From Octopus sinensis (taxonomy: Eukaryota), in the NCBI RefSeq assembly GCF_006345805.1, contig NC_043010.1, forward strand, positions 59,086,001-59,150,000: a stretch of 64,000 nt of DNA. The letters run 5' to 3'. Of this stretch, positions 23,464-62,780 are shown in pieces (the stretch's first letter is position 1; every line of letters begins with the position of its first letter). A program made the translations under genes and the position numbers. A model generated the notes under the pieces. It was not told the origin of the DNA. It worked only from the letters and a program-made list of their open reading frames with translations, and searched no databases.

Positions 23464-25839
23464 ATGTTATTGTCATTGTCCATTGTATTATCAATGGTCC
23501 ACTGTGTCCTGACCATAGACCTTACCTACCATGTGGAAGAAGAGAGAAGTCCAGGAACCTATGTAGCAGACATTGCTGCCGATTCTAAACTTTTAGACAA
23601 TGTTAAACCATCTGACCAACATTTGATAACATTCAGTCAATTCAAACGAAAGGTGGCACAGTTATTTAATATCACCAAAACAGGTAAGCTGTACACTGCT
23701 CAGACACTGGATGCAGAAGATCTCTGCACATTCAACAAAGAATGTTCTAGAACTATGAAGGTTGTTGTCAATAAAGGAATCAGTGTTTCAAAAATATTAA
23801 AAATCAAAATTGTTATAGAAGATATCAATGACCATCAACCAGAGTTTCCTATAAAGAATGTGAATATACAGTTTGGAGAAGATGACCGTATCAGTTCAAA
23901 AAGATCAATACCGAATGCCATGGACAAAGATGTTGGATTTCAAAACTCCTTAATTCAATATAAATTAAAATCAAAGAATGGAGAACCATTCTCTCTGTCA
24001 GTGTCTAAAAGAGCTGATGGTATTTCTTCACTTAAAATAGTTTTAAAAGAATCATTAGACAGAGAAATCAAAGATACATATTTATTACAAGTCATAGCTA
24101 AAGATGGAGGTTCACCAGCAAAACAAGGTATTTTGAATATAAATATCTCAATAATAGATTTAAACGACAACCCACCTGTATTTTCTAAACCTTTATATAA
24201 TATATCCATACAAAGTACACATCATAAATCCAAACCCATCATTGTTTTATCTGTAACAGATGCTGATTCTGGTGAAAATGGCAAAATTACTTTCCATTTC
24301 AGTCCAAAGACATCAGATCTAGCAAAAAGCTATTTTCAGTTAAATAAAACCAGTGGAAATATTCTGTTGAGGGAATATTCAAATCTGGGAAAAAAGAAAA
24401 CCTATGAATTATTTGTAGAAGCCAGAGACGGAGGTATTCCACCTCTCAATTCCATAGCAACTGTTCTGGTAAATGTTATCAATCAACACAACAATCCCCC
24501 AAATATTGATATTGATTATGTTTCTGCAATCAATGACAACACAGCTACCATCTCTGAAAACATCAAAGTCGGTAGTTTCATTGCTTATGTGATGGTCACT
24601 GACAATGATGTGGGACAAAATGGAGAGGTCAGCTGTGATATCAAACATGATACATTCAAACTACAGTCAATGGGATCTAAAGAATATAAAATCATTCTAA
24701 ACAAACCAGTGGACAGAGAAACACAAGGACACTATAACATTCCTGTCTCCTGTCAAGATAAAGGATTACCTCCTCTCAAAAGTGTTAAAAGCCTCTCTAT
24801 CCAAGTGACTGACATCAACGATGTACAACCACAGTTTACCAAAGACACATTCCAATTCCTCACCTACGAAAACAAAGATAAAGACTTCCCTATTGGTTTT
24901 GTCAATGCCACTGACCCTGATCTTGGATCTGCTGGACAACTCACGTATTCTCTGCTGCGTAAAGAAAAATCCAATCTCCCATTTCTCATCACCAGTTATG
25001 GCTTCATTTCAGCGACCATGTCATTGGACAGAGAGAAACAAGATGTGTATAAGTTTGAGGTTTTTGTCAAAGACAATGGAAGCCCATCTCTGAATGACAC
25101 AGCGAATGTTGTTGTTGAGATTCTAGATCAAAATGACAATGCTCCGTATTTTACATATCCTAGTAGTGACCCTTACACGCTAAATGTGCAGTACCATCCG
25201 CAGAGTAAGAGTGACATCACAGTTTTGAGAGCTTCTGATGGGGACAGTGGAAACAATGCTTTCCTCAGATATGCAATCATACAAGGAAATGATAAACAGT
25301 TGTTTAGTATGAACTCACACAGTGGTGCTTTATCCTTCTCCAGACAAGTTTATCTAAATGATGCTGGAAGTTATGAGCTGGTGTTTGTTGTGAAGGACAG
25401 TGGTAGTCCAGTTCAGTCGTCAACAACTAGTGTCACTTTGGTATTGGCTGTTAGTAACGAGACATCACCAATGTCGAAGAGTGGACCTTTACAATCTTCA
25501 GGTCGGGTCCATATGACATGGGTTATTATCATTGTATCATCAGCAGTAATAATATCAGTGGCTATTGTTGTTTCTATAACGCTGTGTATTATGAAATGTA
25601 TTAAACACAGAGATAACACAGCTGCTGCCACAAAGAATACAGCCTACCAAGGTAGAGCAGAGATGAAACAATTGTTGTACCAGACTAACACTTCTGTTGC
25701 TATGTCGAGGAATGCAGAAGAGATGGTGAAGCGGAATATCTATTCTGAGAGATCCAAGAGTGAATGTTATGCAGAAGGTCAGCTACAGAACAAATATGAA
25801 TCTTCAGTTCAGTCGAGAACTTTACCAAAACCTACCCCA
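23464..25839 (+). CDS. Pcdh: Protocadherin P2, large coding exon
   Basis: 806-aa ORF 23464-25884 with six cadherin repeats and a TM. Acceptor at 23421-22, donor at 25840. Confidence 0.95.
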
Positions 25840-26010
25840 GTAAGTGGAAACATTACATTTTCTCTCTGTAAAAGTGAACAATGAAATCTCTTTGAATATG
25901 TTTTAACTTCAATAATACATTCCAATATTAAATTGTTCTCTCTCCATGTTGATTGTAACTTCCATTGTTTGGTGTCTTCTCACATTTCTTTATCGTTTGT
26001 TTGTCAACAG

Positions 26011-26164
26011 AAATACTGTCAACCTGTTGTGGTGACATCAAGTGATGATGCTGTGGAAGATAATGCTACTATGGTTTGTAACTATACATCAGATACAATG
26101 TCATCCAAGAGAAGTGGTAGACATGGAGAGTTGAAACATTACGAAGAAATACCAGGAATATCAG
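26011..26164 (+). CDS. Pcdh: P2 cytoplasmic exon
   Basis: AG/GT bounded, 154 nt, frame-compatible. Confidence 0.85.
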
Positions 26165-26711
26165 GTTAGCAACTACATTGACAATATGTCCTTCATGCAT
26201 AGATATTAGCAGTTATTTGTTATAAACTTATAAGTTATAGTAATTAGTAAAGGATAAATTACCCATCATCATCATCATTCGGCATCTGCTTTCCATGCTG
26301 GCATGGGTTAGATGGCTTGATTGGAATTGGTAAGCTGAAGAGCTACGCCAAGCTCCAGTCTTGTTTGGTATGGTTTGTACAGCTGGGTGCCAACCACTCC
26401 AAGAGTGTAATGGCTGCTTTTTACATGCCACTGGCACGGCAGTTGCTTTCATGTGCCACTGGGATGGGTGCCTATCACATGACACTGGCACTAGTAACGT
26501 TTATGATTTCATGTGGCTTGACAAATCTTGTAAAGCATGGCTTATCACAAAAGCCCTTGGCCACTTGTCATTTCCCTAGAAATATTTCTCTGCTTTTGAA
26601 TCCGAAATATGTTTATATCATCATCATATTTTTCTCTTTTATTGTCATATCTTTGATTAAATCATCAACATAAATGCCACATTTATAATGTATTCTGTCT
26701 CTAAATTTCAG

Positions 26712-26788
26712 ATCAAAGTATATATAAAAACAATGATACATCTACATCAAAAGAATCCAGTGAAGAGACACCAGTGAAACATGTTTAA
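26712..26788 (+). CDS. Pcdh: P2 terminal coding exon (DQSIYKNNDTSTSKESSEETPVKHV*)
   Basis: tttcag acceptor, GTT TAA end, AATAAA at 26944. Confidence 0.8.
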
Positions 26789-27451
26789 TTATGTTATTGA
26801 AATAACATAACTATTATAATATATTATAATATATTATAATATATGATAATATATGTAATTTAAGATAGTACTTCTTCAATACATATGCAATATCAACATT
26901 TACCGTCATTACAACAGTGTATATATGTGAAGATAGAAGTGTTAATAAATAACTAATAGTTCTGATAAGAAAAGATGAAGTTTAAAGCTATAGTTTTCTT
27001 TGTTGATCTAATTATGTTAGGTTTATTTTTTGTGTACATTCAAACAGATTATTTCTACACATAGTGCTTGTTTTGAACGCTAAATATCTCTCCTTTTTGT
27101 AGGCCAAATAATACTGAATTCTAAATTTAGCTCAGAGTTGTTACTTCTTGATTTGAGACAAATATTTCACAAATATTTGTAATTAGAGCTCAATTATTTA
27201 ATTTTATTTCTATTTTAGACAATATCAATGAGAAATCACAACATTCTTGTGACAGTCTACAAATATTTTCATTAAAATGTAACTAAATATAAATTTAAAC
27301 AAGCATTTAAATTCATGAATTTTAGGAATAATATACTTCTGAATAAATATAGTCAATGCTAGTAATTCTGAAGAAAAAGAATTTCACTTTCTTCTTTGTA
27401 TAAGTTCAAGCAGTTATGCCTAATCAAATCAATATTAAAGAGAAGATTGCC

Positions 27452-27482
27452 ATTGGTCTTCTGTTAAGGTCATTCAACCAAT
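27452..27482 (+). promoter_or_regulatory. Paired inverted CCAAT boxes, putative P3 promoter
   Basis: ATTGG 27452-56 and CCAAT 27478-82, retained within diverged flanks. Confidence 0.6.
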
Positions 27483-27596
27483 CAAATTGTCACTAAAATA
27501 TAGAAATATATCTCTGAGAAAGCTAAGCATTCACATTACTGATGTTAGTAAATCAAACAATTGTGGTAGGTTAAACTCTAGAATTTCATAGCTATT

Positions 27597-27646
<50 letters not shown>

Positions 27647-27692
27647 TAGTAATTATCATCTTTAAGGGTAAATACATACAGAATATTATTAG

Positions 27693-27894
27693 ATGGACGT
27701 ACTCCCACAAAACATACAACTTCAGTGACACATGCAACCCTCTCCTAGCAGCAGACTCTCTGCCTGACGTGCTACACTACTCCATCACCATAACAGCCAT
27801 TCTCACACCATTACAGCAGCACTTACAATGGATCTTTCTACAACAATACATCTTTCTTTCTCACTGAATAACCAATGATATAATTATTAAAAAG
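27693..27894 (+). other. Conserved putative non-coding leader exon of P3 (202 nt)
   Basis: 2-nt deletion relative to other copies (consistent with non-coding), GTAAGT donor at 27895. Confidence 0.65.
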
Positions 27895-30800
27895 GTAAGT
27901 TTCTATTTAATCTTTTTATAATCTCATTTGATATTATAAATCTCACTAAATCTGAAAAATTTTCTTCTAACATGTTTAATTTTAACAAAGGAACAAAGAG
28001 ATTGAACAATAATTCACCCATATTTTTCAATAATGCTGTTCATATTGTTTTTCATCACAATTTGTGAGATGATGATGCTTGAAATGGTTAATATTTAATC
28101 TTTAATCCATTGAAACAATATAACCTGTCTCCATAATATTTACGGAGAACAGTCTTCATAATATAAAGTTTCTCTTATTATAAATAATATTGTATTATTA
28201 TAAATATATTGTATCAATATATCGTTGATGGTTTATGGAAGATTTGTTTTTTCATCTGTTTTAGCCATCATACATCGGATGCATGATGTTTTGTATAAAA
28301 TATGAAGTAAAATACCAAAATGTATTTAAATCTGCTTACCGTATGTAGATTGTTAGTAGTAGGTGATGAGGTAATTGCACGTTGCAGATCTCAGCTAATG
28401 GTGGACATAGTAGTATTCAGTCAAATGAAAATGATAGAATGTTGGATAGGCCATTCAAATGTGAACAACTAACTCTGTGGAATTGACAGAGTGTATACAA
28501 TATTTATTTGTTATATGATTACTTTTAAAAATATATATAAGTATGATAAAGTGTTTTAAATACATCTTCCTTCTTCATCTATTTTCATATTTTATTTACT
28601 TGTGTAAATTCAGTTCAGATTTTTTATCATAGTTTTTACCCCACATTTTCCAGTATTTACTCAGGGATTTTGATAAAAGAATTTTTGAAGCTAACATTTC
28701 ACAGAAATTAAAGTTGAATTGTTTTTCAATATGAATTAAATATACAAATGTAATTATAAGCAATTCATCCTCACTTGCTATAATCTCAGTATAGTCACAG
28801 AACATTTTATAATGTTTTTGTGGAAATCACCGAAACTGCTATCATTAAAAATCTGTTCTCCTCACAAATTTTTTTCCTGCTCTGAATTTTTTCCACTTCA
28901 ACTTGTATTCTTTATTTATTCTCTTCTCTCAAACCTTTCACTCATTACCTCAACACTCCGATTTCATTTATTCTTTTGTCATTCTTCTCATTCAAGATTT
29001 CTTCATCATTGACTGTCTATTTGTCAGGAACAGTGACTCAAATCATTTTCATATTTTAAACTATTTGAAAGTAAACTAGATTTTATAATTTGTTTTAGAT
29101 TTTCCTTTTCTAAAGACATTCGCTTTTATTGAGATTTTAAAATGACTGTGATTCCAATTTCGATTTTGTCTCAGTATTGTCTCTGTTCTTGTCCCGTCTT
29201 TCCAAGTCTAATCTTTAATCTTAGTATTACAGGGACCTCATTGATCTCTATACACACACTCAACGATTAATGGAAAAATTAACTAAGATTTATATTAAGT
29301 AGAGGATTCTAGAAGTTAGTATAAATTGCTTTTTTTTTTATTATTATTATTGTATTGAACGGCTTTGGAAGAAACAAATACTTACATGAAGGCTGTTTGT
29401 GTAATATATATGAAATGCATAAAAAGGGAAAATTAGGTGAATAGCATTAAAAATACTACTTATAGAATGCAGCAAGAATTCTTTGACATAGGAATGTGAC
29501 CAGGTGAACTGTTAAACCTAACCTTATTCACTCAAATGTCCATAACAAACAATTTGATATGTTGATATGAATAACATAACTCACATCTATAAATAAATAA
29601 ATGTGTGTGTGTGTGTCTATACACAAATATACATCACTTTATATTTTTAACCAACGTAGTCGTCGTTATAAATCATTCAGTTAAGTTTAATTAATCTTTA
29701 ATGTATTCCTTCCACTATTTTCACGATCATCATTTTGTTTGCTTTTCTATACTGACATGAGTTGGAAGAGTCTTTATGGTCGAAAACTGTGTTATTCTTA
29801 TCTCCCTCCTTGATGGGTCGAGGACTGTCACACCACACACAAACACACATATGCACACACACACACATACATACACACACACATACATACACACACAAAC
29901 ACACACACACTCATACACACAAACATGCACACATTCCATTTTATGACATGATTTCGAAACCTGGATTGCCTTTCTGTCATCAACCACTTGAGAATGTTTT
30001 GGCCATTTTATTGTGACAGCAGCATTACAGAGATTTGCTTTCCCCCAGTAGAATCAAAAAGTCCTATCAACCCTACGTTGTCACAGTTTCACTTTGGAAA
30101 TAACATGCATGTTTCTTATTGGGACTCTAACACTAGAGAGGTTTGCTTATGCTCATGAAAATCAAAGCCCTGTCTTTATATTTTCACCAGCCCCAGAGAG
30201 GCTGAGAGAGGCTGTGTCCCCTCTAACCTAAGGATTCCACTCTTCTCTGTGTTGTTCTTATTCATAGAACTGTGTGTAGAAAAAAGCATTTCTATCACAT
30301 CATCAACCCCAGGAGCATGGTAATCCGTGATCTGTCTTAAAGAAGCCCCTCTTCTTTCATCAGCCTTTAATCCTTAATGCTCATAAGTCATCGTGTAAGG
30401 CTTAATGGGGAACTATTTCGAGATCCATAACAGTTGTATAGAGTTCTGGCTTAAAGAGTTGCTTCTATTCTAGTTGATACGGGTTGCTTGCTATATAAGG
30501 AGTTTTATTGAGGGATAACCTAATATCCCTTCCAATGTGGTACCTACATTATTGTACTGATTCTTAGTATAAGCATTGGCCCCATATTAGTTCATAGGAG
30601 AAACTGCTGAGTGTTGGATAGCCCCCTTCTATTGTTGGGTGTTTTAGCTTGGTATCTTCTTTTTACTTACCTAATTTATGAGGAGTGTAATAGCAAGTGG
30701 TTACCCCAAGATTGTCTGCAGACTAAAGGTTTCGTCTGTACACTGCATAGGTTCTTTTGCAGATCTAATGGCAAATGGGCATTAGGTTTTCAGTAGCTGG

Positions 30801-34602: not shown

Positions 34603-36978
34603 ATGTTCCTGCCATTGTCTATTGTATTTTCGCTGGTCCAGTGTGTCCTGACCATAGACCTTACCTACCACGTGGAAGAAGAGAGAAGTCCAGGAACATA
34701 TGTAGCAGACATTGCTGCCGATTCTAAACTTTTAGACAATGTTAAACCATCTGACCAACATTTGATAACATTCAGTCAATTCAAACGAAAGGTGGCACAG
34801 TTATTTAACATCACCAAAACAGGTAAACTGTACACTGCTCAGACACTGGATGCAGAAGATCTCTGCACATTCAACAAAGAATGTTCCAGAACTGTGAAAG
34901 TTGTGGTTAATAAAGGAAGAAGTATTACAAAGATATTAAAAATCAAAATTGTAATAGAAGATATCAATGACCATCAACCAAACTTTCCTATGAGAAATGT
35001 CAATATACTGTTTAGTGAAGATGATCGCAAAGGTGCAAAAAGATCAATACCCAATGCCATAGACAAAGATGTTGGATTTCAAAACTCATTAATACAATAT
35101 AAATTAAAATCAAAGAATGGAGAACCATTCTCTCTGTCAGTGTCTAAAAGAGCTGATGGTATTTCTTCTCTTAAAATAGTTTTAAAAGAAACATTGGACA
35201 GAGAAATCAAAGATACATATTTATTACAGGTCATAGCTAAAGATGGAGGGTCACCAGCAAAACAAGGGATTTTGAATATAAATATTTCTGTAATAGATGT
35301 TAATGACAACCCACCAGAGTTTTCTAAACCTTTATATAATATATCCATACAAAGTGCGCATCACAAATCTAAACCCATCATTGTTTTATCTGTGACAGAT
35401 GCTGATTCTGGTGAAAATGGTAAAATTACTTTCCATTTCAGTCCAAAGACATCAGATATAGCAAAAAGTTATTTTCAATTAAATGAAACCAGTGGAAATA
35501 TTCAGTTAAGGGAATATTCAAATTTTGGGAAAAAGAAAACCTATGAACTATTTATAGAAGCCAGAGATGGGGGCAACCCTCCTCTCATTTCTATAGCAAC
35601 AGTTCTGGTAAATGTTATCAACCAACACAACAATCCTCCATCTATTGATATTGATTATGTTTCTTCAATCAATGACAACACAGCTACCCTTTCGGAAGAC
35701 ACCAGAGTTGGTAGTTTCATTGCTTATGTGATGGTCACTGACAATGATGTGGGACAAAATGGAGAGGTCAGCTGTGATATCAAACATGATACATTCAAAC
35801 TACAGTCAATGGGATCCAAGGAATATAAAATCATTCTAAACAAACCAGTGGACAGAGAAACACAAGGACACTATAACATTCCTGTCTCGTGTCAAGATAA
35901 AGGATTACCTCCTCTGAAAAGTGTTAAAAGCCTCTCTATCCAAGTGACTGACATCAACGATGTACAACCACAGTTTACCAAAGATACATTCCAATTCCTC
36001 ACCTACGAAAACAAAGATAAAGACTTCCCTATTGGTTTTGTCAATGCCACTGACCCTGATCTTGGATCTGCTGGACAACTCACATATTCTCTGCTGCGTA
36101 AAGAAAAATCCAATCTCCCATTTCTCATCACCAGTTATGGCTTCATTTCAGCGACCATGTCATTGGACAGAGAGAAACAAGATGTGTATAAGTTTGAGGT
36201 TTTTGTCAAAGACAATGGAAGCCCATCTCTGAATGACACAGCGAATGTTGTTGTTGAGATTCTAGATCAAAATGACAATGCTCCGTATTTTACATATCCT
36301 AGTAGTGACCCTTACACGCTAAATGTGCAGTACCATCCGCAGAGTAAGAGTGACATCACAGTTTTGAGAGCCTCTGATGGGGACAGTGGAAACAATGCTT
36401 TCCTCAGATATGCAATCATACAAGGAAATGATAAACAGTTGTTTAGTATGAACTCACACAGTGGTGCTTTATCCTTCTCCAGACAAGTTTATCTAAATGA
36501 TGCTGGAAGTTATGGGCTGGTGTTTGTTGTGAAGGACAGTGGTAGTCCAGTTCAGTCGTCAACAACTAGTGTCACTTTGGTATTGGCTGTTAGTAACGAG
36601 ACATCACCAATGTCGAAGAGTGGACCTTTACAATCTTCAGGTCGGGTCCATATGACATGGGTTATTATCATTGTATCATCAGCAGTAATAATATCAGTGG
36701 CTATTGTTGTTTCTATAACGCTGTGTATTATGAAATGTATTAAACACAGAGATAACACAGCTGCTGCCACAAAGAATACAGCCTACCAAGGTAGAGCAGA
36801 GATGAAACAATTGTTGTACCAGACTAACACTTCTGTTGCTATGTCGAGGAATGCAGAAGAGATGGTGAAGCGGAATATCTATTCTGAGAGATCCAAGAGT
36901 GAATGTTATGCAGAAGGTCAGCTACAGAACAAATATGAATCTTCAGTTCAGTCGAGAACTTTACCAAAACCTACCCCA
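34603..36978 (+). CDS. Pcdh: Protocadherin P3, large coding exon
   Basis: The ORF track starts at 34519, but the homologous ATG is 34603, after the acceptor at 34546-47. Donor at 36979. Confidence 0.95.
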
Positions 36979-37149: not shown

Positions 37150-37302
37150 AAATACTGTCAACCTGTTGTGGTGACATCAAGTGATGATGCTGTGGAAGAT
37201 AATGCTACTATGGTTTGTAACTATACATCAGATACAATGTCATCCAAGAGAAGTGGTAGACAAGGAGACTGAAACATTACGAAGAAATACCAGGAGTATC
37301 AG
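37150..37302 (+). CDS. Pcdh: P3 cytoplasmic exon with a 1-nt deletion creating TGA at 37270-37272
   Basis: GGAGACTGAAAC versus GGAGACTTGAAAC in all other copies. Exon is 153 nt. Confidence 0.75.
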
Positions 37303-38594: not shown

Positions 38595-38671
38595 ATCAAA
38601 ATATATATAAAAACAATGATAATTCTACATCAAAAGATTCCAGTGAAGAAACACCAGTGAAACATGTATAA
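38595..38671 (+). CDS. Pcdh: P3 terminal exon (DQNIYKNNDNSTSKDSSEETPVKHV*), translated only if the upstream deletion is an error
   Basis: tttcag acceptor, frame intact, AATAAA at 38883. Confidence 0.7.
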
Positions 38672-39232: not shown

Positions 39233-39253
39233 ATTGGTCTTTCCTCATCCAAT
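39233..39253 (+). promoter_or_regulatory. Paired inverted CCAAT boxes (shorter spacer), putative P4 promoter
   Basis: ATTGG 39233-37 and CCAATCAG from 39249. Confidence 0.6.
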
Positions 39254-39463
39254 CAGATTCTTACTAAAACATAAAACAAAATCACTAACAAAGAGCAGGA
39301 TTCACATTATTGATGTTATTAAGCCAAAACATTATGGTCTGTTTAAACTATAGAATATTGTAGCTATATAAATCTCTCTCTCTGTATATATATATGCAAA
39401 CAATCACTGGAAGTAGTCAACAAACATTATCTTTAAGGATAAATACATACAGAATATTATCAG

Positions 39464-39667
39464 ATGGACGTACTCCCACAAAACATACAACTTCAGTGAC
39501 ACATGCAACCCTCTCCTAGCAGCAGACTCTCTGCCTGACGTGCTACACTACTCCATCACCATAACAGCCATTGTCACACCATTACAGCAGCACTTACAAT
39601 GGATCTTTCTACAACAATACATCTTTCTCTTTCTCACTGAATAACCAATGATATAATTACTAAAAAG
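39464..39667 (+). other. Conserved putative non-coding leader exon of P4
   Basis: 204 nt, GTAAGT donor at 39668. Confidence 0.65.
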
Positions 39668-41639
39668 GTAAGTCTCTATTTCATATTTTATAATCTCATT
39701 TGATATAATAAGTCTCATTGAATTTGTTAGATATTGTTCTCACATATTTAATATTAACAAAAAGAACAAAGAAATTGAACAATAATTCATGCGTGTTCTG
39801 CAGTAATGTTGTGTGTGTTGTTTTATTACACAAATAATTTGGTGATGTTGATTGAGATGTTTAATATTTAAATTTCTTCCAATAAAAATAATATTTTATG
39901 TCTATATAAGGTTTGTGACGCATATTAATCAGTAGCATTAGACAACAGCCAAAATGTTCCGGTGAGGCAGTGTTTGTATGTGTTTGGTGTTAGGAAGATA
40001 AAATGTTATTTCTATACTGTAGATGGTGTTTAACAGATATGTTAAAATATTTTGTGTAAAATATGAAATATACTATAATGTATTGAAATCTGGTCATAGT
40101 GTATAGATTGTTATCAGTAGTGGGAGATTTTAGTTTGAGAGAATGCCCGTCATCTCACGATTCACATCTGTCAGGAAGTGAATATTAATGGTGGAATATT
40201 GAGGAAGACAGTGAGAAAGACCAACTCCTTTTGGAGGTGCCAGAATATAAACAATATCATTTATTTTGTGTATGTATTTGAGTGTAAGCCATTGTAAAAT
40301 GTAATTCAGTACGTTGTTTAACATAATTTCTTTCTATTTTTCAGTATTTTCAATATTTGACAATATTTCTTTTTGTGAATTTTTCTTTGAATTTCACTGC
40401 TTATTTTTTAAACTGAATATTTTGTTTATTTTTGAACTGAATTATCAAATTAGTTTTTAACAAATATAATATATAAAAGCTACATTGAAAACCATAAATC
40501 TATGTCTTTCACTTTGTATATTTATATGTTTTGTAATGTCTTATGCCTCTATGTTATTGCTTCATTTCTTTCATTATTGATCCCTGGGCTTCAAAGTCTG
40601 CCAGCTGCTCTTCACCACCACTTGAACCCAAATGTTACACTTGCTTTTGTTTCTTCCCAACGTTTTCAAACTCCCCCTTTTCCCTTATTCCTTCTCTCCT
40701 TCTAATTTGAGACTTTGCTATATTAAACATACAATGCACTCTTAATCTAAGTCACAGTGGTGCTGCAAAGGTTTCTACAGAGACACTTGAGTTCTGGAAG
40801 TGCTGTGTGTTCCAATCACATGTAACACTAAACAAAATTTTCCACACATCTCACCCCATTAAGCTTAACTGCATCTTCCCTTCTCCTCTTCCTCACATCT
40901 TTTCCCCATGCTCTGTGTTTATCTCTCCCACCTCTCTACCTTGCCCACTGTATCATTGCTTTGTTATCCACCCCCCCCTTCTTTATATCCAGGTTTCACC
41001 AGTCACTGTATTCTCTTCCTTCCATCTTCTTTACATTCATGTGAATTCCTTATTTGTGCATCTTTATCAATGCCCTACCATCCAATCTTTATTCTCATTC
41101 CTGTACCTTGAGAGCATATCCTGGCATATCGCCTCCATCTCTCTCACACTTTAATAGGTTTCCACCTATTAAAAAAACATGCAAAAATCGACCTTGCCAA
41201 TGCTGATGCCATATGGGAAGCTCCCAATCCCATCTGTAAAGTGATTAGCATTAGGAAGGACATCCAACTGTAAAAAACCTGCCAGAACTGACAGTGGAGC
41301 AGTCCTCTGCTTTGCCAGTTCCTGTCCAACCACCCAACCCATGCCAGCATGGAAGATGGACGTTAGATAATAATGATGATGAGAATGTTTATGATGGTGA
41401 TGAGACTCAATAACATTTAAAGAATGCTTAGTGTTTCCTCATATTCAGTAATTTCTTCCTTGAAATAATTCTGGAACTGTTTTTAAGTGAGCAATTGTCA
41501 TTTGAAAATTACTTCTGCATAAATTTATAAAAGCATGTATGAATGGCTGAGTCAATAGGGTATCATTTAATCAACTAAAGATAAATTCTTCATATGATTT
41601 GGAACAACTAGTTTTCCTTTTAATGCACAAACTAAGCTT

Positions 41640-48545: not shown

Positions 48546-48801
48546 AGCGCCTCTTTTCTCAATTTCCTCACTTAAACATTTCTATATAGAATACAAAAAG
48601 AAAAAAGGCTTAGTTCCAAGTTCTCTATTATGATAATTGTTCCTATATATTTTCATAAGATAATCTTAATCTTTGGAGACAATATACTTATGTACATTTT
48701 GTGTGTTGAAATCAAACAATAATAACTAATGTATTTTTGTTTTAGGTTAATTCTTCAACAAATCAGAACATTTTTAACCAGTTCCAACACTCAACAGCAA
48801 C

Positions 48802-51177
48802 ATGTTACTGTCGTTGTCTATTGTATTGTCAGTGGTCCACTGTGTCCTGACCATAGACCTTACCTACCATGTGGAAGAAGAGAGAAGTCCAGGAACATAT
48901 GTAGCAGACATTGCTGCCGATTCTAAACTTTTAGACAATGTTAAACCATCTGACCAACATTTGATAACATTCAGTCAATTCAAACGAAAGGTGGCACAGT
49001 TATTTAACATCACCAAAACAGGTAAACTGTACACTGCTCAGACACTGGATGCAGAAGATCTCTGCACATTCAACAAAGAATGTTCTAGAACTATGAAAGT
49101 TGTTGTCAATAAAGGAAGAAGTATTACAAAGATATTAAAAATCAAAATTGTAATAGAAGATATCAATGACCATGAACCTAAGTTTCCAAAAACTATAGTG
49201 TATATAGAATTTGGAGAAAATGATCGTAAAGGTTCTAAAGTATCACTACCGAATGCCATAGACAAAGATGTTGGATTTCAAAATTCATTAATTCAATATA
49301 AATTAAAATCAAAGAATGGAGAACCATTCTCTCTGTCAGTGTCTAAAAGAGCTGATGGAATTTCTTCTCTTAAAATAGTCTTAAAAGAATCATTGGACAG
49401 AGAAATCAAAGATACATATTTATTACAGGTCATAGCTAAAGATGGAGGGTCACCAGCAAAACAAGGTATTTTAAATATAAATATCTCAATAATAGATTTG
49501 AACGACAACCCACCTGTATTTTCTAAACCTTTATATAATATATCCTTACAAAGTACACATCATAAATCCAAACCCATCATTGTTTTATCTGTGACAGATG
49601 CTGATTCTGGGGAAAATGGTAAAATTACTTTCCATTTCAGTCCAAAGACATCAGATATAGCAAAAAGCTATTTTCAATTAAATGAAACCAGTGGAGGCAT
49701 TTTGTTAAGTAAATATTCAAGTTTGGGGAAAAAGAAAACCTACGAATTGTTTATAGAAGCCAGAGATGGGGGCAGCCCTCCCCTCAGTTCTATAGCTACA
49801 GTCCTCGTAAATGTTATCAATCAACACAATAATCCTCCATCTATTGATATTGATTATGTTTCTTCAGTCAATGACAACACAGCTACCATTTCTGAAGATA
49901 CCAGAGTTGGTAGTTTCATTGCTTATGTGATGGTCACTGACAATGATGTGGGACAAAATGGAGAGGTCAGCTGTGATATCAAACATGATACGTTCAAACT
50001 ACAGTCAATGGGATCTAAAGAATATAAAATCATTCTAAACAAACCAGTGGACAGAGAAACACAAGGACACTATAACATTCCTGTCTCCTGTCAAGATAAA
50101 GGATTACCTCCTCTTAAAAGTGTTAAAAGCCTCTCTATCCAAGTGACTGACATCAACGATGTACAACCACAGTTTACCAAAGATACATTCCAATTCCTCA
50201 CCTACGAAAACAAAGATAAAGACTTCCCTATTGGTTTTGTCAATGCCACTGACCCTGATCTTGGATCTGCTGGACAACTCACATATTCTCTGCTGCGTAA
50301 AGAAAAATCCAATCTCCCATTTCTCATCACCAGTTATGGCTTCATTTCAGCGACCATGTCATTGGACAGAGAGAAACAAGATGTGTATAAGTTTGAGGTT
50401 TTTGTCAAAGACAATGGAAGCCCATCTCTGAATGACACAGCGAATGTTGTTGTTGAGATTCTAGATCAAAATGACAATGCTCCGTATTTTACATATCCTA
50501 GTAGTGACCCTTACACGCTAAATGTGCAGTACCATCCGCAGAGTAAGAGTGACATCACAGTTTTGAGAGCGTCTGATGGGGACAGTGGAAACAATGCTTT
50601 CCTCAGATATGCAATCATACAAGGAAATGATAAACAGTTGTTTAGTATGAACTCACACAGTGGTGCTTTATCCTTCTCCAGACAAGTTTATCTAAATGAT
50701 GCTGGAAGTTATGAGCTGGTGTTTGTTGTGAAGGACAGTGGTAGTCCAGTTCAGTCGTCAACAACTAGTGTCACTTTGGTGTTGGCTGTTAGTAACGAGA
50801 CATCACCAATGTCGAAGAGTGGACCTTTACAATCTTCAGGTCGGGTCCATATGACATGGGTTATTATCATTGTATCATCAGCAGTAATAATATCAGTGGC
50901 TATTGTTGTTTCTATAACGCTGTGTATTATGAAATGTATTAAACACAGAGATAACACAGCTGCTGCCACAAAGAATACAGCCTACCAAGGTAGAGCAGAG
51001 ATGAAACAATTGTTGTACCAGACTAACACTTCTGTTGCTATGTCGAGGAATGCAGAAGAGATGGTGAAGCGGAATATCTATTCTGAGAGATCCAAGAGTG
51101 AATGTTATGCAGAAGGTCAGCTACAGAACAAATATGAATCTTCAGTTCAGTCGAGAACTTTACCAAAACCTACCCCA
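48802..51177 (+). CDS. Pcdh: Protocadherin P4, large coding exon
   Basis: 806-aa ORF 48802-51222. Acceptor at 48744-45, donor at 51178. Confidence 0.95.
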
Positions 51178-51348: not shown

Positions 51349-51502
51349 AAATACTGTCAACCTGTTGTGGTGACATCAAGTGATGATGCTGTGGAAGATA
51401 ATGCTACTATGGTTTGTAACTATACATCAGATACAATGTCATCCAAGAGAAGTGGTAGACAAGGAGACTTGAAACATTATGAAGAAATACCAGGAGTATC
51501 AG
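51349..51502 (+). CDS. Pcdh: P4 cytoplasmic exon
   Basis: AG/GT bounded, 154 nt. Confidence 0.85.
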
Positions 51503-51954: not shown

Positions 51955-52031
51955 ATCAAAGTTTATATAAAAACAATGATGCATCTACATCGAAAGATTC
52001 CAGTGAAGAAACACCAGTGAAACATGTCTAA
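51955..52031 (+). CDS. Pcdh: P4 terminal coding exon (DQSLYKNNDASTSKDSSEETPVKHV*)
   Basis: ttccag acceptor, GTC TAA end. Confidence 0.8.
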
Positions 52032-52283
52032 ATGCGAATTATCCCCATGTAAATATAAGATATAGAGTGTTCAGTACAAACGTAAGCATAAACATAAGGG
52101 CATGCACATTGTTCAATTAATATAGTGTTTAGCAGTATACATTATCAGAGCTAAGATAGTCTTCTACACAGCAGTCGTTTCACACGGTCCTTTCCCTTTT
52201 TTCTACATGAATATGTGACATGTGCATCACCAGTCGATATTAAAGTTAACATCTTAACATAGTCTTTTGTTTCGGTTCTTCAG

Positions 52284-52291
52284 CCAATCAG
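52284..52291 (+). promoter_or_regulatory. Single CCAATCAG box, putative P5 promoter
   Basis: The upstream ATTGG is replaced by TTCGG. The downstream cagattctcact context is conserved. Confidence 0.55.
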
Positions 52292-52468
52292 ATTCTCACT
52301 TACATGCAGTCAGAAATTGCTACAAAGATAAGCATTTTTCATTATTGATGTTATTAAATGAAACGATTTTGTTACGTTTAACTAAAGACTATTTTAATAT
52401 ATATCTATAAATATGTAAATAATGAACAAACATCTTGGAGGATAAATACATACACAGAATACTATTAG

Positions 52469-52672
52469 GTGGACGTACTCCCACAAAACATACAACTTCA
52501 GTGACACATGCAACCCTCTCCTAGCAGCAGACTCTCTGCCTGACGTGCTACACTACTCCATCACCATAACAGCCATTGTCACACCATTACAGCAGCACTT
52601 ACAATGGATCTTTCTACAACAATACATCTTTCTCTTTCTCACTGAATAACCAATGATATAATTATTAAAAAG
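52469..52672 (+). other. Conserved putative non-coding leader exon of P5
   Basis: 204 nt, GTAAGT donor at 52673. Confidence 0.65.
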
Positions 52673-54312
52673 GTAAGTTTCCATTTAATCTTTTTATAAT
52701 CTCATTTGATATAATAAGTCTTGCTGAGTGTTTTAGATATTGTTTTAACATATTTAATATGAACAGAAGAACAAAGGGCCTGACCACACATTTTACATTG
52801 CCTTGTCCATCTTGGTCCATCTTGGTCCATCTTGTTCTGTGCCACTAATATTTGGAAGGTGCTTATTGGAATGCTTCATATTTAAATTGCTTTTAATTAA
52901 AACAATATTTTATGTCTATTTCGTGTTTGTAGTAATTGTATTGCTTAGTAACATTCAACAGCAATTTGTACGATATGATGTAGCAGTGTATGTTTGTTTT
53001 TGTTTTTAGGAAGATATAATGAGCTTATATTGTAGATGGTGGTATAATGGTTATTCTTAAGTTGTTGTTTTTTTAATAAAATATGAAGAATTCTAGTAGA
53101 GTGTCTTTAAATCTGGTCTTAGTGTATTGGTTATTATCATTTATAATGTAACGAGGAGTTTGAGCTTTTTGGTTAACAATAATGGCAGACATATTAGAAC
53201 TCACCTCCATCGGGAAGTGAACAGTAATGGTAGCATGTTGAAGATAACAATACTGTGAAAAAGGCCAGCTTCACCTAGAATTAATGGACTATAGAGAATA
53301 CCATTTGTATTGTGTATATATTTATTTGGCAGCCATTGTAAATATAATTCAACATGACTTCCTATTTTAGTTTCTTCTAAAATTTTTGACATAATCTGTT
53401 TATTTTTCCACAATGTTTGCTAGTTGTTAGTTGTGAATTTTCTTTGAATTTCACTGTTTATAAACTTCTGTTATCTTTTAATTGAATTATCAAATTAGTT
53501 TTTAACAAATATAATATATAAAAGCTACATTGAAAACCATAAATCTATGTCTTTCACTTTGTATATTTATATGTTATGCCTCTATGTTATTGCTTCATTT
53601 CTTTCATTATTGATCCCTGGGCTTCAAAGTCTGCCAGCTGCTCTTCACCACCACTTGAACCCAAATGTTACACTTGCTTATGTTTCTTCCCAACGTTTTC
53701 AAACTCCCCCTTTTCCCTTATGCCTTCTCTCCTTCTAATATGAGACGCTGGTATATCAAATATACTACAAACCCCTACTAAGTCACAGTGCTATTGCTAA
53801 GCTATATATAACGTTTGCTCATATTCAGTAATTTTCTCTTTGAAGTGTTTCTAGAACTATTTTTGAATGAAAGCTTATCATTTGTATATATGTGACTAAT
53901 TAGTCACATATATTTTATCTCTTATGCCAGCCATTTACTGATTCCATGAACTGAGTTGTTGAAATTAACCCCATTGAAAACATTTTCCTATAGGGTTGTG
54001 CCAATCTTGTCTCCTTCAATGACACAAAGACACAATAACTATACATATATGTCACTAATTATTTTAAATCTCAAAAATACAAGTTTCTAGAGAGGTGAAC
54101 TTCAGTAGATCTTCAGGAACATTGGCCTCATAGGGAGTATGATTGTGAGGAACTACCAACATGTGAATGTCTCTATCACTGGTTACAATTTAATTTGTGG
54201 TTTTACTTAGAAGAATATATAACAGTTCCCCTTGTGCTAAAAACCTGTCTCAAGAACTTTCTTTGGCAAATGTTTTAGGAAATTGTTTTGAAATTTGAGG
54301 AATTAAAATGTG

Positions 54313-60207: not shown

Positions 60208-60240
60208 ACATATATATATATATTTATATATATATATATC

Positions 60241-60273
<33 letters not shown>

Positions 60274-60405
60274 AGACAGATAGATCGATGTTTTAATTAT
60301 ATGTCAATATTAAACAGTATTGTAACTAATGACATGCATTTCTATTTTAGGTTCAGTCTACACATACCTTGATATATTTAACCACTACCAACATACAACA
60401 GCAAT

Positions 60406-62780
60406 ATGTTACTGTCATTGTCCATTGTATTATCAATGGTCCAGTGTGTGCTGACCATAGACCTTACCTACCACGTGGAAGAAGAGAGAAGTCCAGGAAC
60501 ATATGTAGCAGACATTGCTGCCGATTCTAAACTTTTAGACAACGTTAAACCATCTGACCAACATTTGATAACATTCAGTCAATTCAAACGAAAGGTGGCA
60601 CAGTTATTTAACATCACCAAAACAGGTAAACTGTACACTGCTCAGACACTGGATGCAGAAGATCTCTGCACATTCAACAAAGAATGTTCCAGAACTATGA
60701 AAGTTGTTGTCAATAAAGGAACCAGTGTTTCAAAAATATTAAAAATCAAAATAGTAATAGAAGATATCAATGACCATGAACCTAAATTTCCAAAAAATAC
60801 AGTTTATTTAGAATATGGTGAAGATGATCGTAAAGGTGCTAAAAGATCGTTACCAAATGCCATAGACAAAGATGTTGGATTTCAAAATTCATTAATTCAA
60901 TATAAATTAAAATCAAAGAATGGAGAACCATTCTCTCTGTCAGTGTCTAAAAGAGCTGATGGTATTTCTTCACTTAATATAGTTTTGAAAGAATCATTAG
61001 ACAGAGAAATCAAAGATACATATTTATTACAAGTCACAGCTAAAGATGGAGGTTCACCAGCAAAACAAGGAATTTTGAATATAAATATCTCTATAATGGA
61101 TGTAAATGACAACCTACCAGAGTTTTCTAAACCTCTGTACAATATATCCATACAAAGTACGCATCATAAATCCAAACCCATCATTGTTTTATCTGTAACA
61201 GATGCTGATGCTGGTGAAAATGGTAAAATTACTTTCCATTTCAGTCCAAAGACATCAGATATTGTAAAAAGCTATTTTCAGTTGAATGAAACCAGTGGAA
61301 GCATTTTATTAAGAAAATATTCAAGTCTGGGAAAAAAGAAAACCTATGAATTGTTTATAGAAGCCAGAGATGGGGGCAGTCCACCCTTTAGTTCTATAGC
61401 AACTGTTTTAGTAAATGTTGTCAACCAACACAACAATCCCCCAAATATTGATATTGATTATGTTTCTGCAATCAATGACAACACAGCTACCATCTCTGAA
61501 AACATTAAAGTTGGTAGTTTCATTGCTTATGTGATGGTCACTGACAATGATGTGGGACAAAATGGAGAGGTCAGCTGTGATATCAAACATGATACATTCA
61601 AACTACAGTCAATGGGATCTAAAGAATATAAAATCATTCTAAACAAACCAGTGGACAGAGAAACACAAGGACACTATAACATTCCTGTCTCCTGTCAAGA
61701 TAAAGGATTACCTCCTCTGAAAAGTGTTAAAAGCCTCTCTATCCAAGTGACTGACATCAACGATGTACAACCGCAGTTTACCAAAGATACATTCCAATTC
61801 CTCACCTACGAAAACAAAGATAAAGACTTCCCTATTGGTTTTGTCAATGCCACTGACCCTGATCTTGGATCTGCTGGACAACTCACATATTCTCTGCTGC
61901 GTAAAGAAAAATCCAATCTCCCATTTCTCATCACCAGTTATGGCTTCATTTCAGCGACCATGTCATTGGACAGAGAGAAACAAGATGTGTATAAGTTTGA
62001 GGTTTTTGTCAAAGACAATGGAAGCCCATCTCTGAATGACACAGCGAATGTTGTTGTTGAGATTCTAGATCAAAATGACAATGCTCCATATTTTACATAT
62101 CCTAGTAGTGACCCTTACACGCTAAATGTGCAGTACCATCCGCAGAGTAAGAGTGACATCACAGTTTTGAGAGCTTCTGATGGGGACAGTGGAAACAATG
62201 CTTTCCTCAGATATGCAATCATACAAGGAAATGATAAACAGTTGTTAGTATGAACTCACACAGTGGTGCTTTATCCTTCTCCAGACAAGTTTATCTAAAT
62301 GATGCTGGAAGTTATGAGCTGGTGTTTGTTGTGAAGGACAGTGGTAGTCCAGTTCAGTCGTCAACAACTAGTGTCACTTTGGTATTGGCTGTTAGTAACG
62401 AGACATCACCAATGTCGAAGAGTGGACCTTTACAATCTTCAGGTCGGGTCCATATGACATGGGTTATTATCATTGTATCATCAGCAGTAATAATATCAGT
62501 GGCTATTGTTGTTTCTATAACGCTGTGTATTATGAAATGTATTAAACACAGAGATAACACAGCTGCTGCCACAAAGAATACAGCCTACCAAGGTAGAGCA
62601 GAGATGAAACAATTGTTATACCAGACTAACACTTCTGTTGCTATGTCGAGGAATGCAGAAGAGATGGTGAAGCGGAATATCTATTCTGAGAGATCCAAGA
62701 GTGAATGTTATGCAGAAGGTCAGCTACAGAACAAATATGAATCTTCAGTTCAGTCGAGAACTTTACCAAAACCTACCCCA
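60406..62780 (+). CDS. Pcdh: Protocadherin P5, large exon with a 1-nt deletion in EC6 (~62245): pseudogene or sequencing error
   Basis: ORFs 60406-62253 and 62250-62825 join at CAGTTGTTAGT, versus CAGTTGTTTAGT in paralogs. Acceptor at 60349-50, donor at 62781. Confidence 0.9.

What the first reader, a model, noticed from the sequence alone, without database searches (positions are those of the whole stretch)
23755..61512. Mosaic shuffling of variable patches, with EC1 and EC4 patches co-varying across discordant middles
Seen: the EC1 patch KGRSITK (P3, P4) co-occurs with the EC4 patch SS(I/V)ND..SEDTR (P3, P4). KG(I/T)SVSK (P2, P5) co-occurs with the identical NIDIDYVSAINDNTATISENIK (P2, P5). 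The segments in between group differently: the EC2 start HEPKFPK..VY and the EC3 GGSPP unite P4+P5; DLNDNPPV unites P2+P4 versus DVNDNxPE in P3+P5; LREYSN unites P2+P3. Inference: short-tract gene conversion recombines modules combinatorially, and selection keeps partner surfaces (EC1 with EC4, EC2 with EC3) matched so that each isoform can still bind itself. With only five sequences, chance is not excluded.
Basis: partly seen in the sequence, partly recalled or inferred. Interest (0 to 1): 0.75.

Follow-up and report, generated by a model that had tools for sequence, protein, structure and literature searches.

The report
Octopus protocadherin array: shuffled patches, coupled EC1–EC4
Five neighbouring octopus protocadherin genes are kept almost identical by gene conversion except for a block of old, reshuffled patches, and one residue in domain EC1 (106) and one in EC4 (366) change together across 164 octopod paralogs, as expected if they touch when two copies of the protein bind.

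Summary

- **Literal claims:** all five patch statements check out.
- **Mosaic:** the variable block is exon-1 nt 296-1110, from the EC1 G-strand to the EC4 A'-B loop. It is significantly mosaic (PHI p<0.0002; at least 34 recombination events). An independent O. vulgaris assembly reproduces it.
- **Homogenised flanks:** the rest of exon 1, intron 1 and exon 2 are 98-99.6% identical among paralogs. They carry fixed Octopus/Argonauta differences. The variable block holds 213 polymorphic sites shared by both genera. This is region-limited concerted evolution plus cassette shuffling, as in vertebrate clustered protocadherins.
- **EC1-EC4 link:** it is not significant in five sequences, but it sharpens with more data. 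A basic residue at 106 goes with an acidic residue at 366 in 66 of 66 cases among 164 octopod paralogs. 106-366 is the top long-range pair in an unbiased coupling scan. One pair of positional orthologs (W3/V4) switched both patches together.
- **Structure:** both residues map by homology to the edge of the known antiparallel EC1:EC4 interface.
- **Not shown:** selection for self-binding is inferred only.

Verdict: new member of a known kind.

The parts
655..1343 (+). P0: remnant of a sixth protocadherin copy. It holds exon-1 nt ~1318-1460 joined directly to nt ~2148-2376, then intron 1 and exon 2. An internal deletion of about 690 nt removes the rest of EC5, EC6 and the TM segment.
   Evidence: Self-BLAST, tblastn of the C-terminal tail, alignment A3.
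11892..14159 (+). It carries a 108-nt in-frame deletion in the cytoplasmic part. Exon 2 is about 14331-14484 and exon 3 about 14741-14817.
   Evidence: ORF, gap map, tblastn. The same deletion is in the O. vulgaris ortholog V1.
23464..25839 (+). W2 (P2), exon 1: 2376 nt, 792 codons, GTAAGT donor. Exon 2 is 26011-26164 and exon 3 is 26712-26788. The spliced product is 868 aa.
   Evidence: The length equals that of the annotated 868-aa relatives.
34603..36978 (+). W3 (P3), exon 1. Exon 2 is about 37150-37302 and has a 1-nt deletion in a TT run, which shifts the frame. Exon 3 is about 38595-38671.
48802..51177 (+). W4 (P4), exon 1. Exon 2 is 51349-51502 and exon 3 about 51955-52031. Pfam finds Cadherin_2 plus five Cadherin repeats.
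60406..62780 (+). W5 (P5), exon 1. A 1-nt deletion at CDS nt 1840 (a TTT run, window ~62245) gives a premature stop at 62251-62253. Exon 2 is about 62952-63105 and exon 3 about 63285-63361.
23759..24573 (+). Variable block of W2 (exon-1 nt 296-1110, codons 99-370). The same block is 12187-13001 in W1, 34898-35712 in W3, 49097-49911 in W4 and 60701-61515 in W5. Paralogs are 85-91% identical here, against 98-99.6% in the flanking exon, intron 1 and exon 2.
49102..49128 (+). EC1 patch, codons 101-109 of W4 (VVNKGRSIT); codon 106 is 49117-49119 (Arg). The same codons are 34903-34929 in W3 (Arg106), 23764-23790 in W2 (Ile106), 60706-60732 in W5 (Thr106) and 12192-12218 in W1 (Asp106).
   Evidence: By alignment T109 matches Pcdh10 L86 and I111 matches L88 (PMC7082078).
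49888..49905 (+). EC4b patch, codons 363-368 of W4 (ISEDTR); codon 366 is 49897-49899 (Asp). The same codons are 35689-35706 in W3 (LSEDTR), 24550-24567 in W2, 61492-61509 in W5 and 12978-12995 in W1 (all ISENIK).
   Evidence: This is the A'-B loop, just before F372 and Y375, which match Pcdh10 V359 and L362.
48740..48801 (+). Conserved leader of about 62 nt before the ATG. It opens with a polypyrimidine tract and TGTTTTAG|G, a likely 3' splice acceptor. Homology among paralogs and between genera starts here. The same feature precedes every copy.
   Evidence: Alignment A2; identity profile.

Best explanation
The window is part of a tandem array of octopus protocadherin genes. Each gene has its own three coding exons. 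Two processes act on the array.

1. **Homogenisation (shown).** Frequent gene conversion homogenises a unit of about 2.75 kb. The unit runs from the acceptor of the large exon to the donor of the next small exon and includes the 171-nt intron. The stretch from the EC1 G-strand to the EC4 A'-B loop escapes homogenisation. It holds old patch alleles, many shared with Argonauta, which short conversion tracts reshuffle among genes. Each gene is therefore a mosaic of cassettes.

2. **Coupling (statistics shown, mechanism inferred).** Not all combinations survive. EC1 residue 106 and EC4 residue 366 behave as a charge pair. A basic 106 always comes with Asp or Glu at 366. An acidic 106 comes with Gly, Ala, Asn, Lys or Arg. 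The likely reason is that the two residues face each other across an antiparallel EC1-EC4 trans dimer of the kind solved for vertebrate delta and clustered protocadherins. A conversion that changes one side is then tolerated only with a matching change on the other.

The physical contact, homophilic binding and selection are inferred.
For: **Family membership.** Pfam finds Cadherin_2 plus five Cadherin repeats. The closest solved structures are delta-2 and clustered protocadherin EC1-4 fragments (6VG1 at 3.6e-88, 6VG4, 5DZV).

**Gene model.** Each copy has its own exons 2 and 3.

**Homogenisation.**
- Identity is 98.4% for nt 55-295, 99.2% for nt 1111-2376, 99.6% for intron 1 and 98.2% for exon 2. 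The alignment breaks down just outside the unit (~38-47% identity in a forced global alignment).
- pS is ~0.05 in the flanks against 0.28-0.53 in the variable block.
- GC3 is 0.35-0.38 in the flanks against 0.21-0.23 in the variable block.
- The flanks hold 8 and 13 fixed Octopus/Argonauta differences with 2 and 0 shared polymorphisms. The variable block holds 2 fixed differences and 213 shared polymorphic sites.

**Shuffling.**
- PHI p<0.0002 and Rmin 34.
- Differences between orthologs are clustered and reuse states found in other paralogs.
- The same mosaics appear in an independent assembly.

**Coupling.**
- Close family: R/K106 goes with D366 in 11 of 11 cases, and the two are reciprocal best correlates.
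- LD falls with distance, then rises at 201-300 aa. The top long-range pairs in each genus are EC1 patch against EC4b patch.
- In 108 distant paralogs a basic 106 has an acidic 366 in 55 of 55 cases, and the charge correlation is -0.80.
- In all 164 sequences the counts are 66/0/19/79. Of 26 tree-independent pairs, 19 are concordant, 7 show no change at 366 and none is opposite.
- 106-366 is rank 1 of the long-range MI-APC pairs. EC1xEC4 pairs make up 16 of the top 50, against a 13% baseline.
- W3 and V4 switched both patches.

**Structure by homology.** V101, T109, I111, D349/D351/Y352, F372, Y375 and N413 align to interface residues named for Pcdh10 and Pcdh1 (PMC7082078).
Against: - No coordinates or dimer model were available, so the 106-366 distance was not measured.
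- In the best PDB relatives the two columns do not hold a charge pair. In 6VG1 they are K and A. In Pcdh10 the EC1 site falls in a 3-residue gap.
- The paralogs are not independent. Sequences that share both patches are also closer at synonymous sites in between: 0.17 against 0.22 in Octopus, 0.27 against 0.38 in Argonauta.
- The tree used for the independent pairs comes from a region that itself undergoes conversion.
- The W3/V4 double switch also carries intermediate synonymous markers. It could be one long tract with patchy repair.
- pN/pS in the patches is 0.5-0.75, raised but below 1.
- Solo changes occur: W1/V1 changed EC4b alone, and T106 occurs with both N and D.
- For vertebrate clustered protocadherins EC1/EC4 is reported to give mainly affinity, not specificity (PMC5001838).
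Confidence: 0.68

Rival explanations
1. Neutral history only. The EC1 and EC4b patches are two small markers at the edges of the variable block. Short conversion tracts mostly fall between them and scramble the middle without separating them. The co-occurrence then reflects shared ancestry of whole genes, or occasional long tracts with patchy repair. No selection on pairing is needed.
For: - In the window the 2+5 and 3+4 splits recur all along the gene, also at synonymous sites.
- Pairs that share both patches have lower synonymous distance in the middle.
- V4's switch includes markers at nt 594, 627 and 792 and resembles a V6-like donor over several separate segments.
- A71 looks like an RRVT/PEDIK gene whose EC2 block was overwritten from its neighbour A70.
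- With five sequences the coincidence is not significant.
Against: - There are 0 recombinants in 66 across many subfamilies and two genera.
- 106-366 tops an APC-corrected coupling scan.
- D366 is tied more tightly to R106, 260 codons away, than to sites 1-11 codons away.
- The pairing is charge-complementary and asymmetric, which drift does not predict.
- Patch turnover is fast: 1-2 of 5 orthologs changed a patch at about 2% divergence. Recombinant combinations should therefore arise.
Confidence: 0.2
2. The 106-366 coupling is real but does not come from a trans homophilic interface. It might reflect a cis contact, a folding or trafficking constraint, or binding to a third partner.
For: - No structure of a cephalopod protocadherin was found by the PDB sequence search.
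- The EC3-EC4 linker reads NQHNNPP instead of the usual DxNDNxP, so the ectodomain may not be straight.
- The best PDB relatives do not carry a charge pair at these columns.
Against: - Other top EC1xEC4 couplings (101-413, 109-413, 58-377, 60-413, 62-351, 101-352) fall in segments homologous to the EC1 C and G strands and the EC4 A, B and E strands. These form the antiparallel interface in solved delta protocadherins (PMC7082078).
- A single bend at EC3-EC4 would not bring EC4 next to EC1 of the same chain (geometric inference).
Confidence: 0.08
3. Artefact. The mosaics and odd combinations come from mis-assembly of near-identical tandem copies or from chimeric gene models.
For: - Public gene models in this cluster are often chimeric. 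P0132 is T1 joined to T2. P0135 is a 5410-aa fusion. P0130's model spans 49 kb.
- W3 and W5 have 1-nt deletions in T runs, which could be sequencing errors.
Against: - The analysis used genomic exon sequences, not gene models, for 36 copies.
- Window and O. vulgaris orthologs agree patch by patch.
- Chimeric models would break the coupling rather than create it, and the one exception was such a model.
Confidence: 0.02

Closest known systems
Regional gene conversion in vertebrate clustered protocadherins (Noonan et al. 2004, as cited in PMC6339937; fugu, PMC1852091; Xenopus, PMC4978886)
   Same: - Tandem large exons that encode the ectodomain and TM segment.
- A 3' part more than 99% identical among neighbouring paralogs, also at synonymous sites.
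- A sharp boundary in EC4 or EC5.
- Higher GC3 in the converted part.
- N-terminal EC domains that stay diverse.
   Different: - This is an independent cephalopod expansion.
- Each gene has its own 3' exons instead of shared constant exons.
- A 5' block covering most of EC1 is homogenised too.
- The homogenised unit includes an intron.
- The diversity in the variable block is shared between two genera.
Antiparallel EC1-EC4 trans dimer of delta and clustered protocadherins, and its prediction from residue coevolution (PMC5001838; PMC7082078; bioRxiv 10.1101/493106)
   Same: - EC1xEC4 column pairs are enriched among the top couplings.
- The coupled segments align to the EC1 C and G strands and the EC4 A, B and E strands, which form that interface.
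- Variable residues at the rim of the EC1:EC4 contact are proposed there as specificity determinants in delta protocadherins.
   Different: - No cephalopod structure exists.
- The dominant pair here (106-366, a charge switch) is not a charge pair in the aligned vertebrate proteins.
- In clustered protocadherins EC1/EC4 is described as mostly affinity. Here it carries one of the clearest isoform-distinguishing signals.
Octopus protocadherin expansion (Albertin et al. 2015 and Wang & Ragsdale 2017, as cited in PMC6339937 and PMC10084454)
   Same: The same gene family and head-to-tail clusters. [quoted passage not shown]
   Different: The papers I could read give no region-by-region analysis, no trans-genus polymorphism and no EC1-EC4 coupling. 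Albertin 2015 itself was not held.

Membership tests
Protocadherin (six-EC, delta-2/clustered-like) | An N-terminal protocadherin-type EC1 (Cadherin_2) followed by cadherin repeats, six EC in all | tested here: met
   Pfam: PF08266 at aa 20-103 and PF00028 with 5 stretches.
Protocadherin (six-EC, delta-2/clustered-like) | Signal peptide, single TM segment and cytoplasmic tail, with ectodomain and TM in one large exon | tested here: met
   Read directly from the ORFs. Exon structure.
Protocadherin (six-EC, delta-2/clustered-like) | Closest solved relatives are protocadherin EC1-4 fragments | tested here: met
   6VG1 at 3.6e-88, 6VG4, 5DZV, 6E6B and others.
Protocadherin (six-EC, delta-2/clustered-like) | Homophilic antiparallel EC1-4 trans dimer | not testable with these tools
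   Only indirect evidence: EC1xEC4 couplings and homology of the coupled segments to known interface strands.
Vertebrate-type clustered Pcdh locus | Tandem array of large variable exons in one orientation | tested here: met
   Five copies plus a remnant, all on the + strand, 11-14 kb apart.
Vertebrate-type clustered Pcdh locus | Variable exons spliced to shared constant exons | tested here: not met
   Every copy is followed by its own exons 2 and 3 within about 1-1.7 kb.
Vertebrate-type clustered Pcdh locus | An own promoter with a conserved element before each variable exon, and stochastic promoter choice | not tested
   A likely splice acceptor lies 62 nt before each ATG, so the promoter is further upstream and was not located.
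Concerted evolution by gene conversion | Paralogs within a lineage are more alike than orthologous lineages are, with fixed between-lineage differences in the converted part | tested here: met
   Flanks are 98-99% identical within a genus and 93% between genera, with 8 and 13 fixed differences.
Concerted evolution by gene conversion | Homogenisation also of synonymous and intronic sites, and raised GC3 | tested here: met
   pS ~0.05 in the flanks. Intron 1 is 99.6% identical, and GC3 is 0.36 against 0.22.
Concerted evolution by gene conversion | Mosaic structure: clustered incompatible sites | tested here: met
   PHI p<0.0002 and Rmin 34.
Co-evolving interface residue pair | Statistical coupling that exceeds background and phylogenetic structure | tested here: met
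   Rank 1 long-range MI-APC pair. Basic 106 with acidic 366 in 66 of 66 cases, and 19 concordant against 0 opposite pairs. Caveat: the history is reticulate.
Co-evolving interface residue pair | Physical proximity in the complex | not testable with these tools
   No coordinates were available. The placement rests on sequence alignment to 6VG4 and on published residue lists.
Co-evolving interface residue pair | Mismatched variants lose binding and compensated double variants regain it | not testable with these tools
   This needs an experiment.

The most novel reading that the evidence does not exclude
Octopod protocadherins hold a library of patch alleles older than the Octopus-Argonauta split. 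Short-tract gene conversion deals these alleles out among tandem genes. Epistatic selection on an EC1:EC4 charge lock (106-366, with further co-adapted neighbours: I108/T367/R368 in Octopus, R107/P364 in Argonauta) vetoes mismatched combinations. On this reading cephalopods arrived independently at the vertebrate antiparallel recognition architecture, but place part of the isoform code in EC1:EC4.
Probability: 0.5. Interest if true: 0.72.

Novelty: new member of a known kind. Interest (0 to 1): 0.6.

Why it matters
Cephalopods expanded protocadherins independently of vertebrates, and how their isoforms recognise each other is unknown. The sequences suggest three things.

- The same evolutionary regime operates as in vertebrates: homogenised scaffolds and protected, reshuffled recognition patches.
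- The same antiparallel EC1-EC4 binding mode probably applies.
- There is one concrete, cheap test: swap residues 106 and 366.

The array is also a clean natural case for studying how gene conversion and epistatic selection interact. Positional orthologs about 2% apart already show patch replacement.

Tried and rejected
- **Patch-haplotype AMI.** It showed EC1xEC4b as the strongest long-range pair. It is biased, because the middle patches have nearly one allele per gene. I replaced it with site-level r2 and MI-APC.
- **Backbone phylogeny as the full explanation.** I first took the 2+5 and 3+4 splits for a simple backbone tree. Only about 10 of 30 informative synonymous sites in the middle support it. 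In Argonauta, A71 and the A59/A63 versus A60/A61 groups contradict it.
- **Polarising the W3/V4 switch with an O. sinensis positional ortholog.** This failed, because loci L001 and L005 do not overlap the window. Only allele sharing with T2 (P0134) suggests that W3 is ancestral.
GGSPP is one of the commonest alleles. EC2b x EC3c AMI is 0.17-0.19. The K/N191-L/F328 pair seen in both genera of the close family is not general, ranking 2291.
- **The search of protein representatives.** It returned mostly giant multi-repeat cadherins, which are useless for the 106-366 test.
- **Albertin 2015.** The paper was not held.
- **Loci fetched in parallel (L004, L007-L009).** They did not reach the Python sandbox, so I used DNA alignment instead.
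- **Gross pN/pS.** It gave no value above 1, so I make no claim of positive selection.
- **Structure prediction.** I did not run it, because the tool returns no coordinates and cannot model a dimer.

Full report
**What is in the window.** Seven long ORFs are present.
- Five lie on the + strand and are near-identical protocadherins: W1 at 11892, W2 at 23464, W3 at 34603, W4 at 48802 and W5 at 60406.
- Two lie on the - strand and are reverse-transcriptase ORFs of retroelements (3672-5765 and 19821-21659).
- Pfam finds Cadherin_2 plus five cadherin repeats.
- The best solved relatives are delta-2 and clustered protocadherin EC1-4 fragments.
- Public relatives are annotated protocadherins of Octopus vulgaris, O. 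sinensis, O. bimaculoides and Argonauta hians.
- The window is colinear with O. vulgaris OX597827.1 at 97-98% identity, intergenic DNA included. It therefore comes from a very close relative. I could not name the species.

**Gene model.**
- The annotated relatives are 868 aa, against the 806-aa ORF.
- The ORF is left at a GTAAGT donor after codon 792.
- Each copy has its own 154-nt exon 2 about 170 nt downstream, and a 77-nt exon 3 0.3-1.3 kb further on.
- There are no shared constant exons in the window.
- A conserved polypyrimidine tract plus TGTTTTAG|G lies 62 nt before every ATG, in Argonauta too. It looks like a splice acceptor.

**Checking the observation.**
- All five patch statements are literally true.
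- The coordinates run from W2 codon 98 to W5 codon 369. Patch coordinates were verified by translation.
- Among the five CDS there are 218 variable sites. Almost all lie in nt 1-54 (signal peptide) and nt 296-1110.
- Of the 81 informative sites, every one of the ten possible two-sequence groupings is supported. 52% of site pairs are incompatible. PHI is significant (p<0.0002 at k=3 and 5), and at least 34 recombination events are needed.
- The mosaics are reproduced in the independent O. vulgaris assembly. The positional orthologs are W1-V1, W2-V3, W3-V4, W4-V5 and W5-V6. W2/V3 differ at 11 of 2240 nt and W4/V5 at 20. Mis-assembly is therefore excluded.

**Concerted evolution with a protected block.**
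- Mean identity among the five copies is 98.4% for nt 55-295, 88.6% for nt 296-1110, 99.2% for nt 1111-2376, 99.6% for intron 1 and 98.2% for exon 2. It drops to ~38-47% in the forced global alignment right after the exon-2 donor, and to 38-62% upstream of the leader.
- Even S5 of O. sinensis keeps a 99.4% identical 3' part, although its variable block is only ~73-76% identical to the others.
- pS is about 0.05 in the flanks and 0.28-0.53 in the variable block.
- GC3 is 0.35-0.38 in the flanks against 0.21-0.23 in the block. The fugu study used the same sign as evidence of conversion (PMC1852091).
- I aligned 36 genomic copies from the window, O. vulgaris, O. sinensis and Argonauta.
  - The flanks hold 8 and 13 fixed Octopus/Argonauta differences and 2 and 0 shared polymorphisms.
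  - The variable block holds 2 fixed differences and 213 sites polymorphic in both genera.
- The flanks are therefore homogenised within each lineage, while the patch alleles are older than the split of the two genera.
- Whole patch alleles recur across genera. Examples are 'ARISSKRS', 'DEDIGKGAKRS' and 'ENDRKGSKVS'.

**Ongoing shuffling.**
- Differences between positional orthologs are clustered. Nearly all involve states present in other paralogs.
  - W4/V5 differ in the EC3 patch (nt 888-910).
  - W1/V1 differ in nt 406-551 and in the EC4 patch.
  - W3/V4 differ at 58 sites.
- O. vulgaris also has one extra gene unit (V2) between the orthologs of W1 and W2.

**The EC1-EC4 link.**
- *Within the window.* The coincidence cannot be told from chance or ancestry. 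The 2+5 and 3+4 groupings are simply the commonest all along the gene, also at synonymous sites.
- *With 57 non-redundant close relatives.*
  - R or K at 106 always goes with D366 (11 of 11).
  - Among about 400 allele states, R106 is the best correlate of D366 (r2 0.60), and D366 is the best correlate of R/K106 (0.67). Both exceed their own neighbours.
  - LD falls with distance and then rises at 201-300 residues.
  - The top long-range pairs in each genus separately are EC1-patch against EC4b-patch residues: R106/I108 with T367/R368 in Octopus, and R106/R107 with P364 in Argonauta.
- *The apparent exception.* P0132 (KGTSVSK with EDTR) is a chimeric gene model that joins two neighbouring genes.
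- *Orthologs.* W3 and V4 differ in both patches: KGRSITK/L.EDTR against KGTSVSK/I.ENIK. They keep the same EC2 patch, EC2-EC3 linker patch and EC3 patches. O. sinensis T2 shares W3's alleles down to silent sites, so V4 is probably the derived copy.
- *With 108 more distant octopod paralogs (<75% identity).* A basic 106 goes with an acidic 366 in 55 of 55 cases. The charge correlation is -0.80, far above that of neighbouring columns.
- *In all 164 sequences.*
  - The table is 66 / 0 / 19 / 79: basic 106 with acidic 366, basic 106 with non-acidic 366, non-basic 106 with acidic 366, and neither.
  - An acidic 106 has an acidic 366 in only 3 of 50 cases.
  - Of 26 non-overlapping sister pairs that differ at 106, 19 change 366 in the predicted direction, 7 do not change, and none goes the other way.
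- *Unbiased scan.* An MI-APC scan (Neff 116; 50,403 column pairs) ranks 106-366 first among pairs at least 60 residues apart. EC1xEC4 pairs are enriched, with 16 of the top 50 against a 13% baseline.

**Where the residues sit (inference by homology).**
- The HMMER alignment to Pcdh10 (6VG4) reproduces the residue numbers used in the delta-protocadherin paper: F81, L86, L88, P318, S342/S344/T345, V359 and L362 (PMC7082078).
- It maps octopus V101, T109 and I111 onto the EC1 G-strand contacts.
- It maps D349/D351/Y352 and F372/Y375 onto the EC4 A- and B-strand contacts.
- It maps N413 onto the position of pcdh1 K398.
- Residue 106 lies three residues before T109, in an F-G loop insertion. Residue 366 lies in the A'-B loop, six residues before F372. 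In an antiparallel arrangement the top of EC1 meets the bottom of EC4, so a 106-366' contact is plausible.
- Other top couplings fall in the homologous interface strands: 58-377, 60-413, 62-351, 101-352, 101-413 and 109-413.
- I had no coordinates, so no distance was measured.

**What weakens the selection reading.**
- Paralogs are not independent.
- Conversion tracts that fall between two edge markers cannot separate them.
- Sequences that share both patches are somewhat closer at synonymous sites in between.
- The V4 switch may be one long patchy tract.
- pN/pS in the patches is 0.5-0.75, not above 1.
- Solo changes occur.
- In vertebrate clustered protocadherins EC1/EC4 is held to give mainly affinity (PMC5001838).

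Against these points stand the total absence of basic-106/non-acidic-366 genes, the asymmetry and charge logic of the pairing, and its rank in the coupling scan.

**The EC2-EC3 claim.** GGSPP is one of the commonest alleles, and the association is weak. A K/N191-L/F328 pair is seen in both genera of the close family but is not general.

**Comparison with what is known.**
- Region-limited gene conversion with a sharp boundary in EC4/EC5 and diverse N-terminal domains is established for vertebrate clustered protocadherins (PMC1852091, PMC4978886; Noonan 2004 as cited in PMC6339937).
- Gene conversion was suggested for octopus (PMC6339937, citing Albertin 2015).
- My searches found no paper giving the region map, the trans-genus polymorphism or the 106-366 coupling for cephalopods.
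- I therefore file this as a new, convergent member of a known kind. Its differences are separate 3' exons for each gene, a homogenised 5' block, and a strong isoform-distinguishing signal in EC1:EC4.

**Verdict.**
- Observation: confirmed.
- Interpretation: partly supported.
- Confidence: about 0.9 that conversion-driven concerted evolution plus cassette shuffling is at work, and about 0.65-0.7 that the EC1-EC4 coupling reflects selection for a matched interface.

Noticed in passing
window 655-1343: Remnant of a sixth protocadherin copy (P0). Exon-1 nt ~1318-1460 is fused to nt ~2148-2376, then intron 1 and exon 2 follow. About 690 nt covering EC5-EC6-TM are deleted, and unrelated DNA lies upstream.
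   Followed up: partly
window 14132 (W1, CDS nt 2241-2348 missing): A 108-nt in-frame deletion removes 36 residues of the cytoplasmic tail. It is flanked by the repeated 'SR' codons. The O. vulgaris ortholog V1 has the same deletion, so it predates the split of the two genomes.
   Followed up: partly
window ~62245 (W5) and ~37270 (W3 exon 2); L003:44401+1401 (V5); L003:56136 onward (V6): W5 and W3 have single-base deletions in T runs that break the frame. The O. vulgaris orthologs have different lesions: V5 has a 2-nt insertion and V6 has several indels. These are either independent decay of some array members or sequencing errors.
   Followed up: partly
L003:6877-17245 against window ~19745-21924: O. 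vulgaris has an extra gene unit (V2) between the orthologs of W1 and W2. This is copy-number change by unequal exchange, or loss in the window's lineage.
   Followed up: partly
window 48740-48801 and the same place before each copy: Homology among paralogs, and with Argonauta, begins at a polypyrimidine tract plus TGTTTTAG|G 62 nt before the ATG. This is a likely splice acceptor. An untranslated 5' exon must lie upstream, either one per gene or shared; which is unknown.
   Followed up: partly
window 6033-6618, 18932-19516, 27427-27983, 39245-40770, 52279-53801: A repeated element, 76-84% identical among most copies (96% between the first two listed), lies roughly 1-5 kb downstream of each gene. 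It is either a remnant of the original duplication unit or a transposon family.
   Followed up: no
window 3672-5765 (-), 19821-21659 (-); 16558-17327 and 17300-18062: Two reverse-transcriptase ORFs of LINE-like elements lie between the genes. There is also a local 0.75-kb tandem duplication, and several short dispersed repeats.
   Followed up: no
codons 340-346 of every copy (e.g. window 49819-49839 in W4): The EC3-EC4 linker reads NQHNNPP instead of the usual calcium-binding DxNDNxP. In the alignment of 36 octopod copies the nucleotide differences seen here are silent, except A62 (NQQNNPP). This linker may bind less calcium and be flexible.
   Followed up: no
public proteins P0132, P0135, P0130, P0147, P0151 (loci L001, L003, L005): Gene models in these clusters are often chimeric or fused. 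P0132 joins two neighbouring genes. P0135 is 5410 aa across six or more genes. P0130's model spans 49 kb.
   Followed up: yes
codons 191 and 328; codons 62 and 351: K/N191 co-varies with L/F328 in both genera of the close family but not family-wide. Pair 62-351 is the second-best long-range coupling in the 164-sequence scan.
   Followed up: partly
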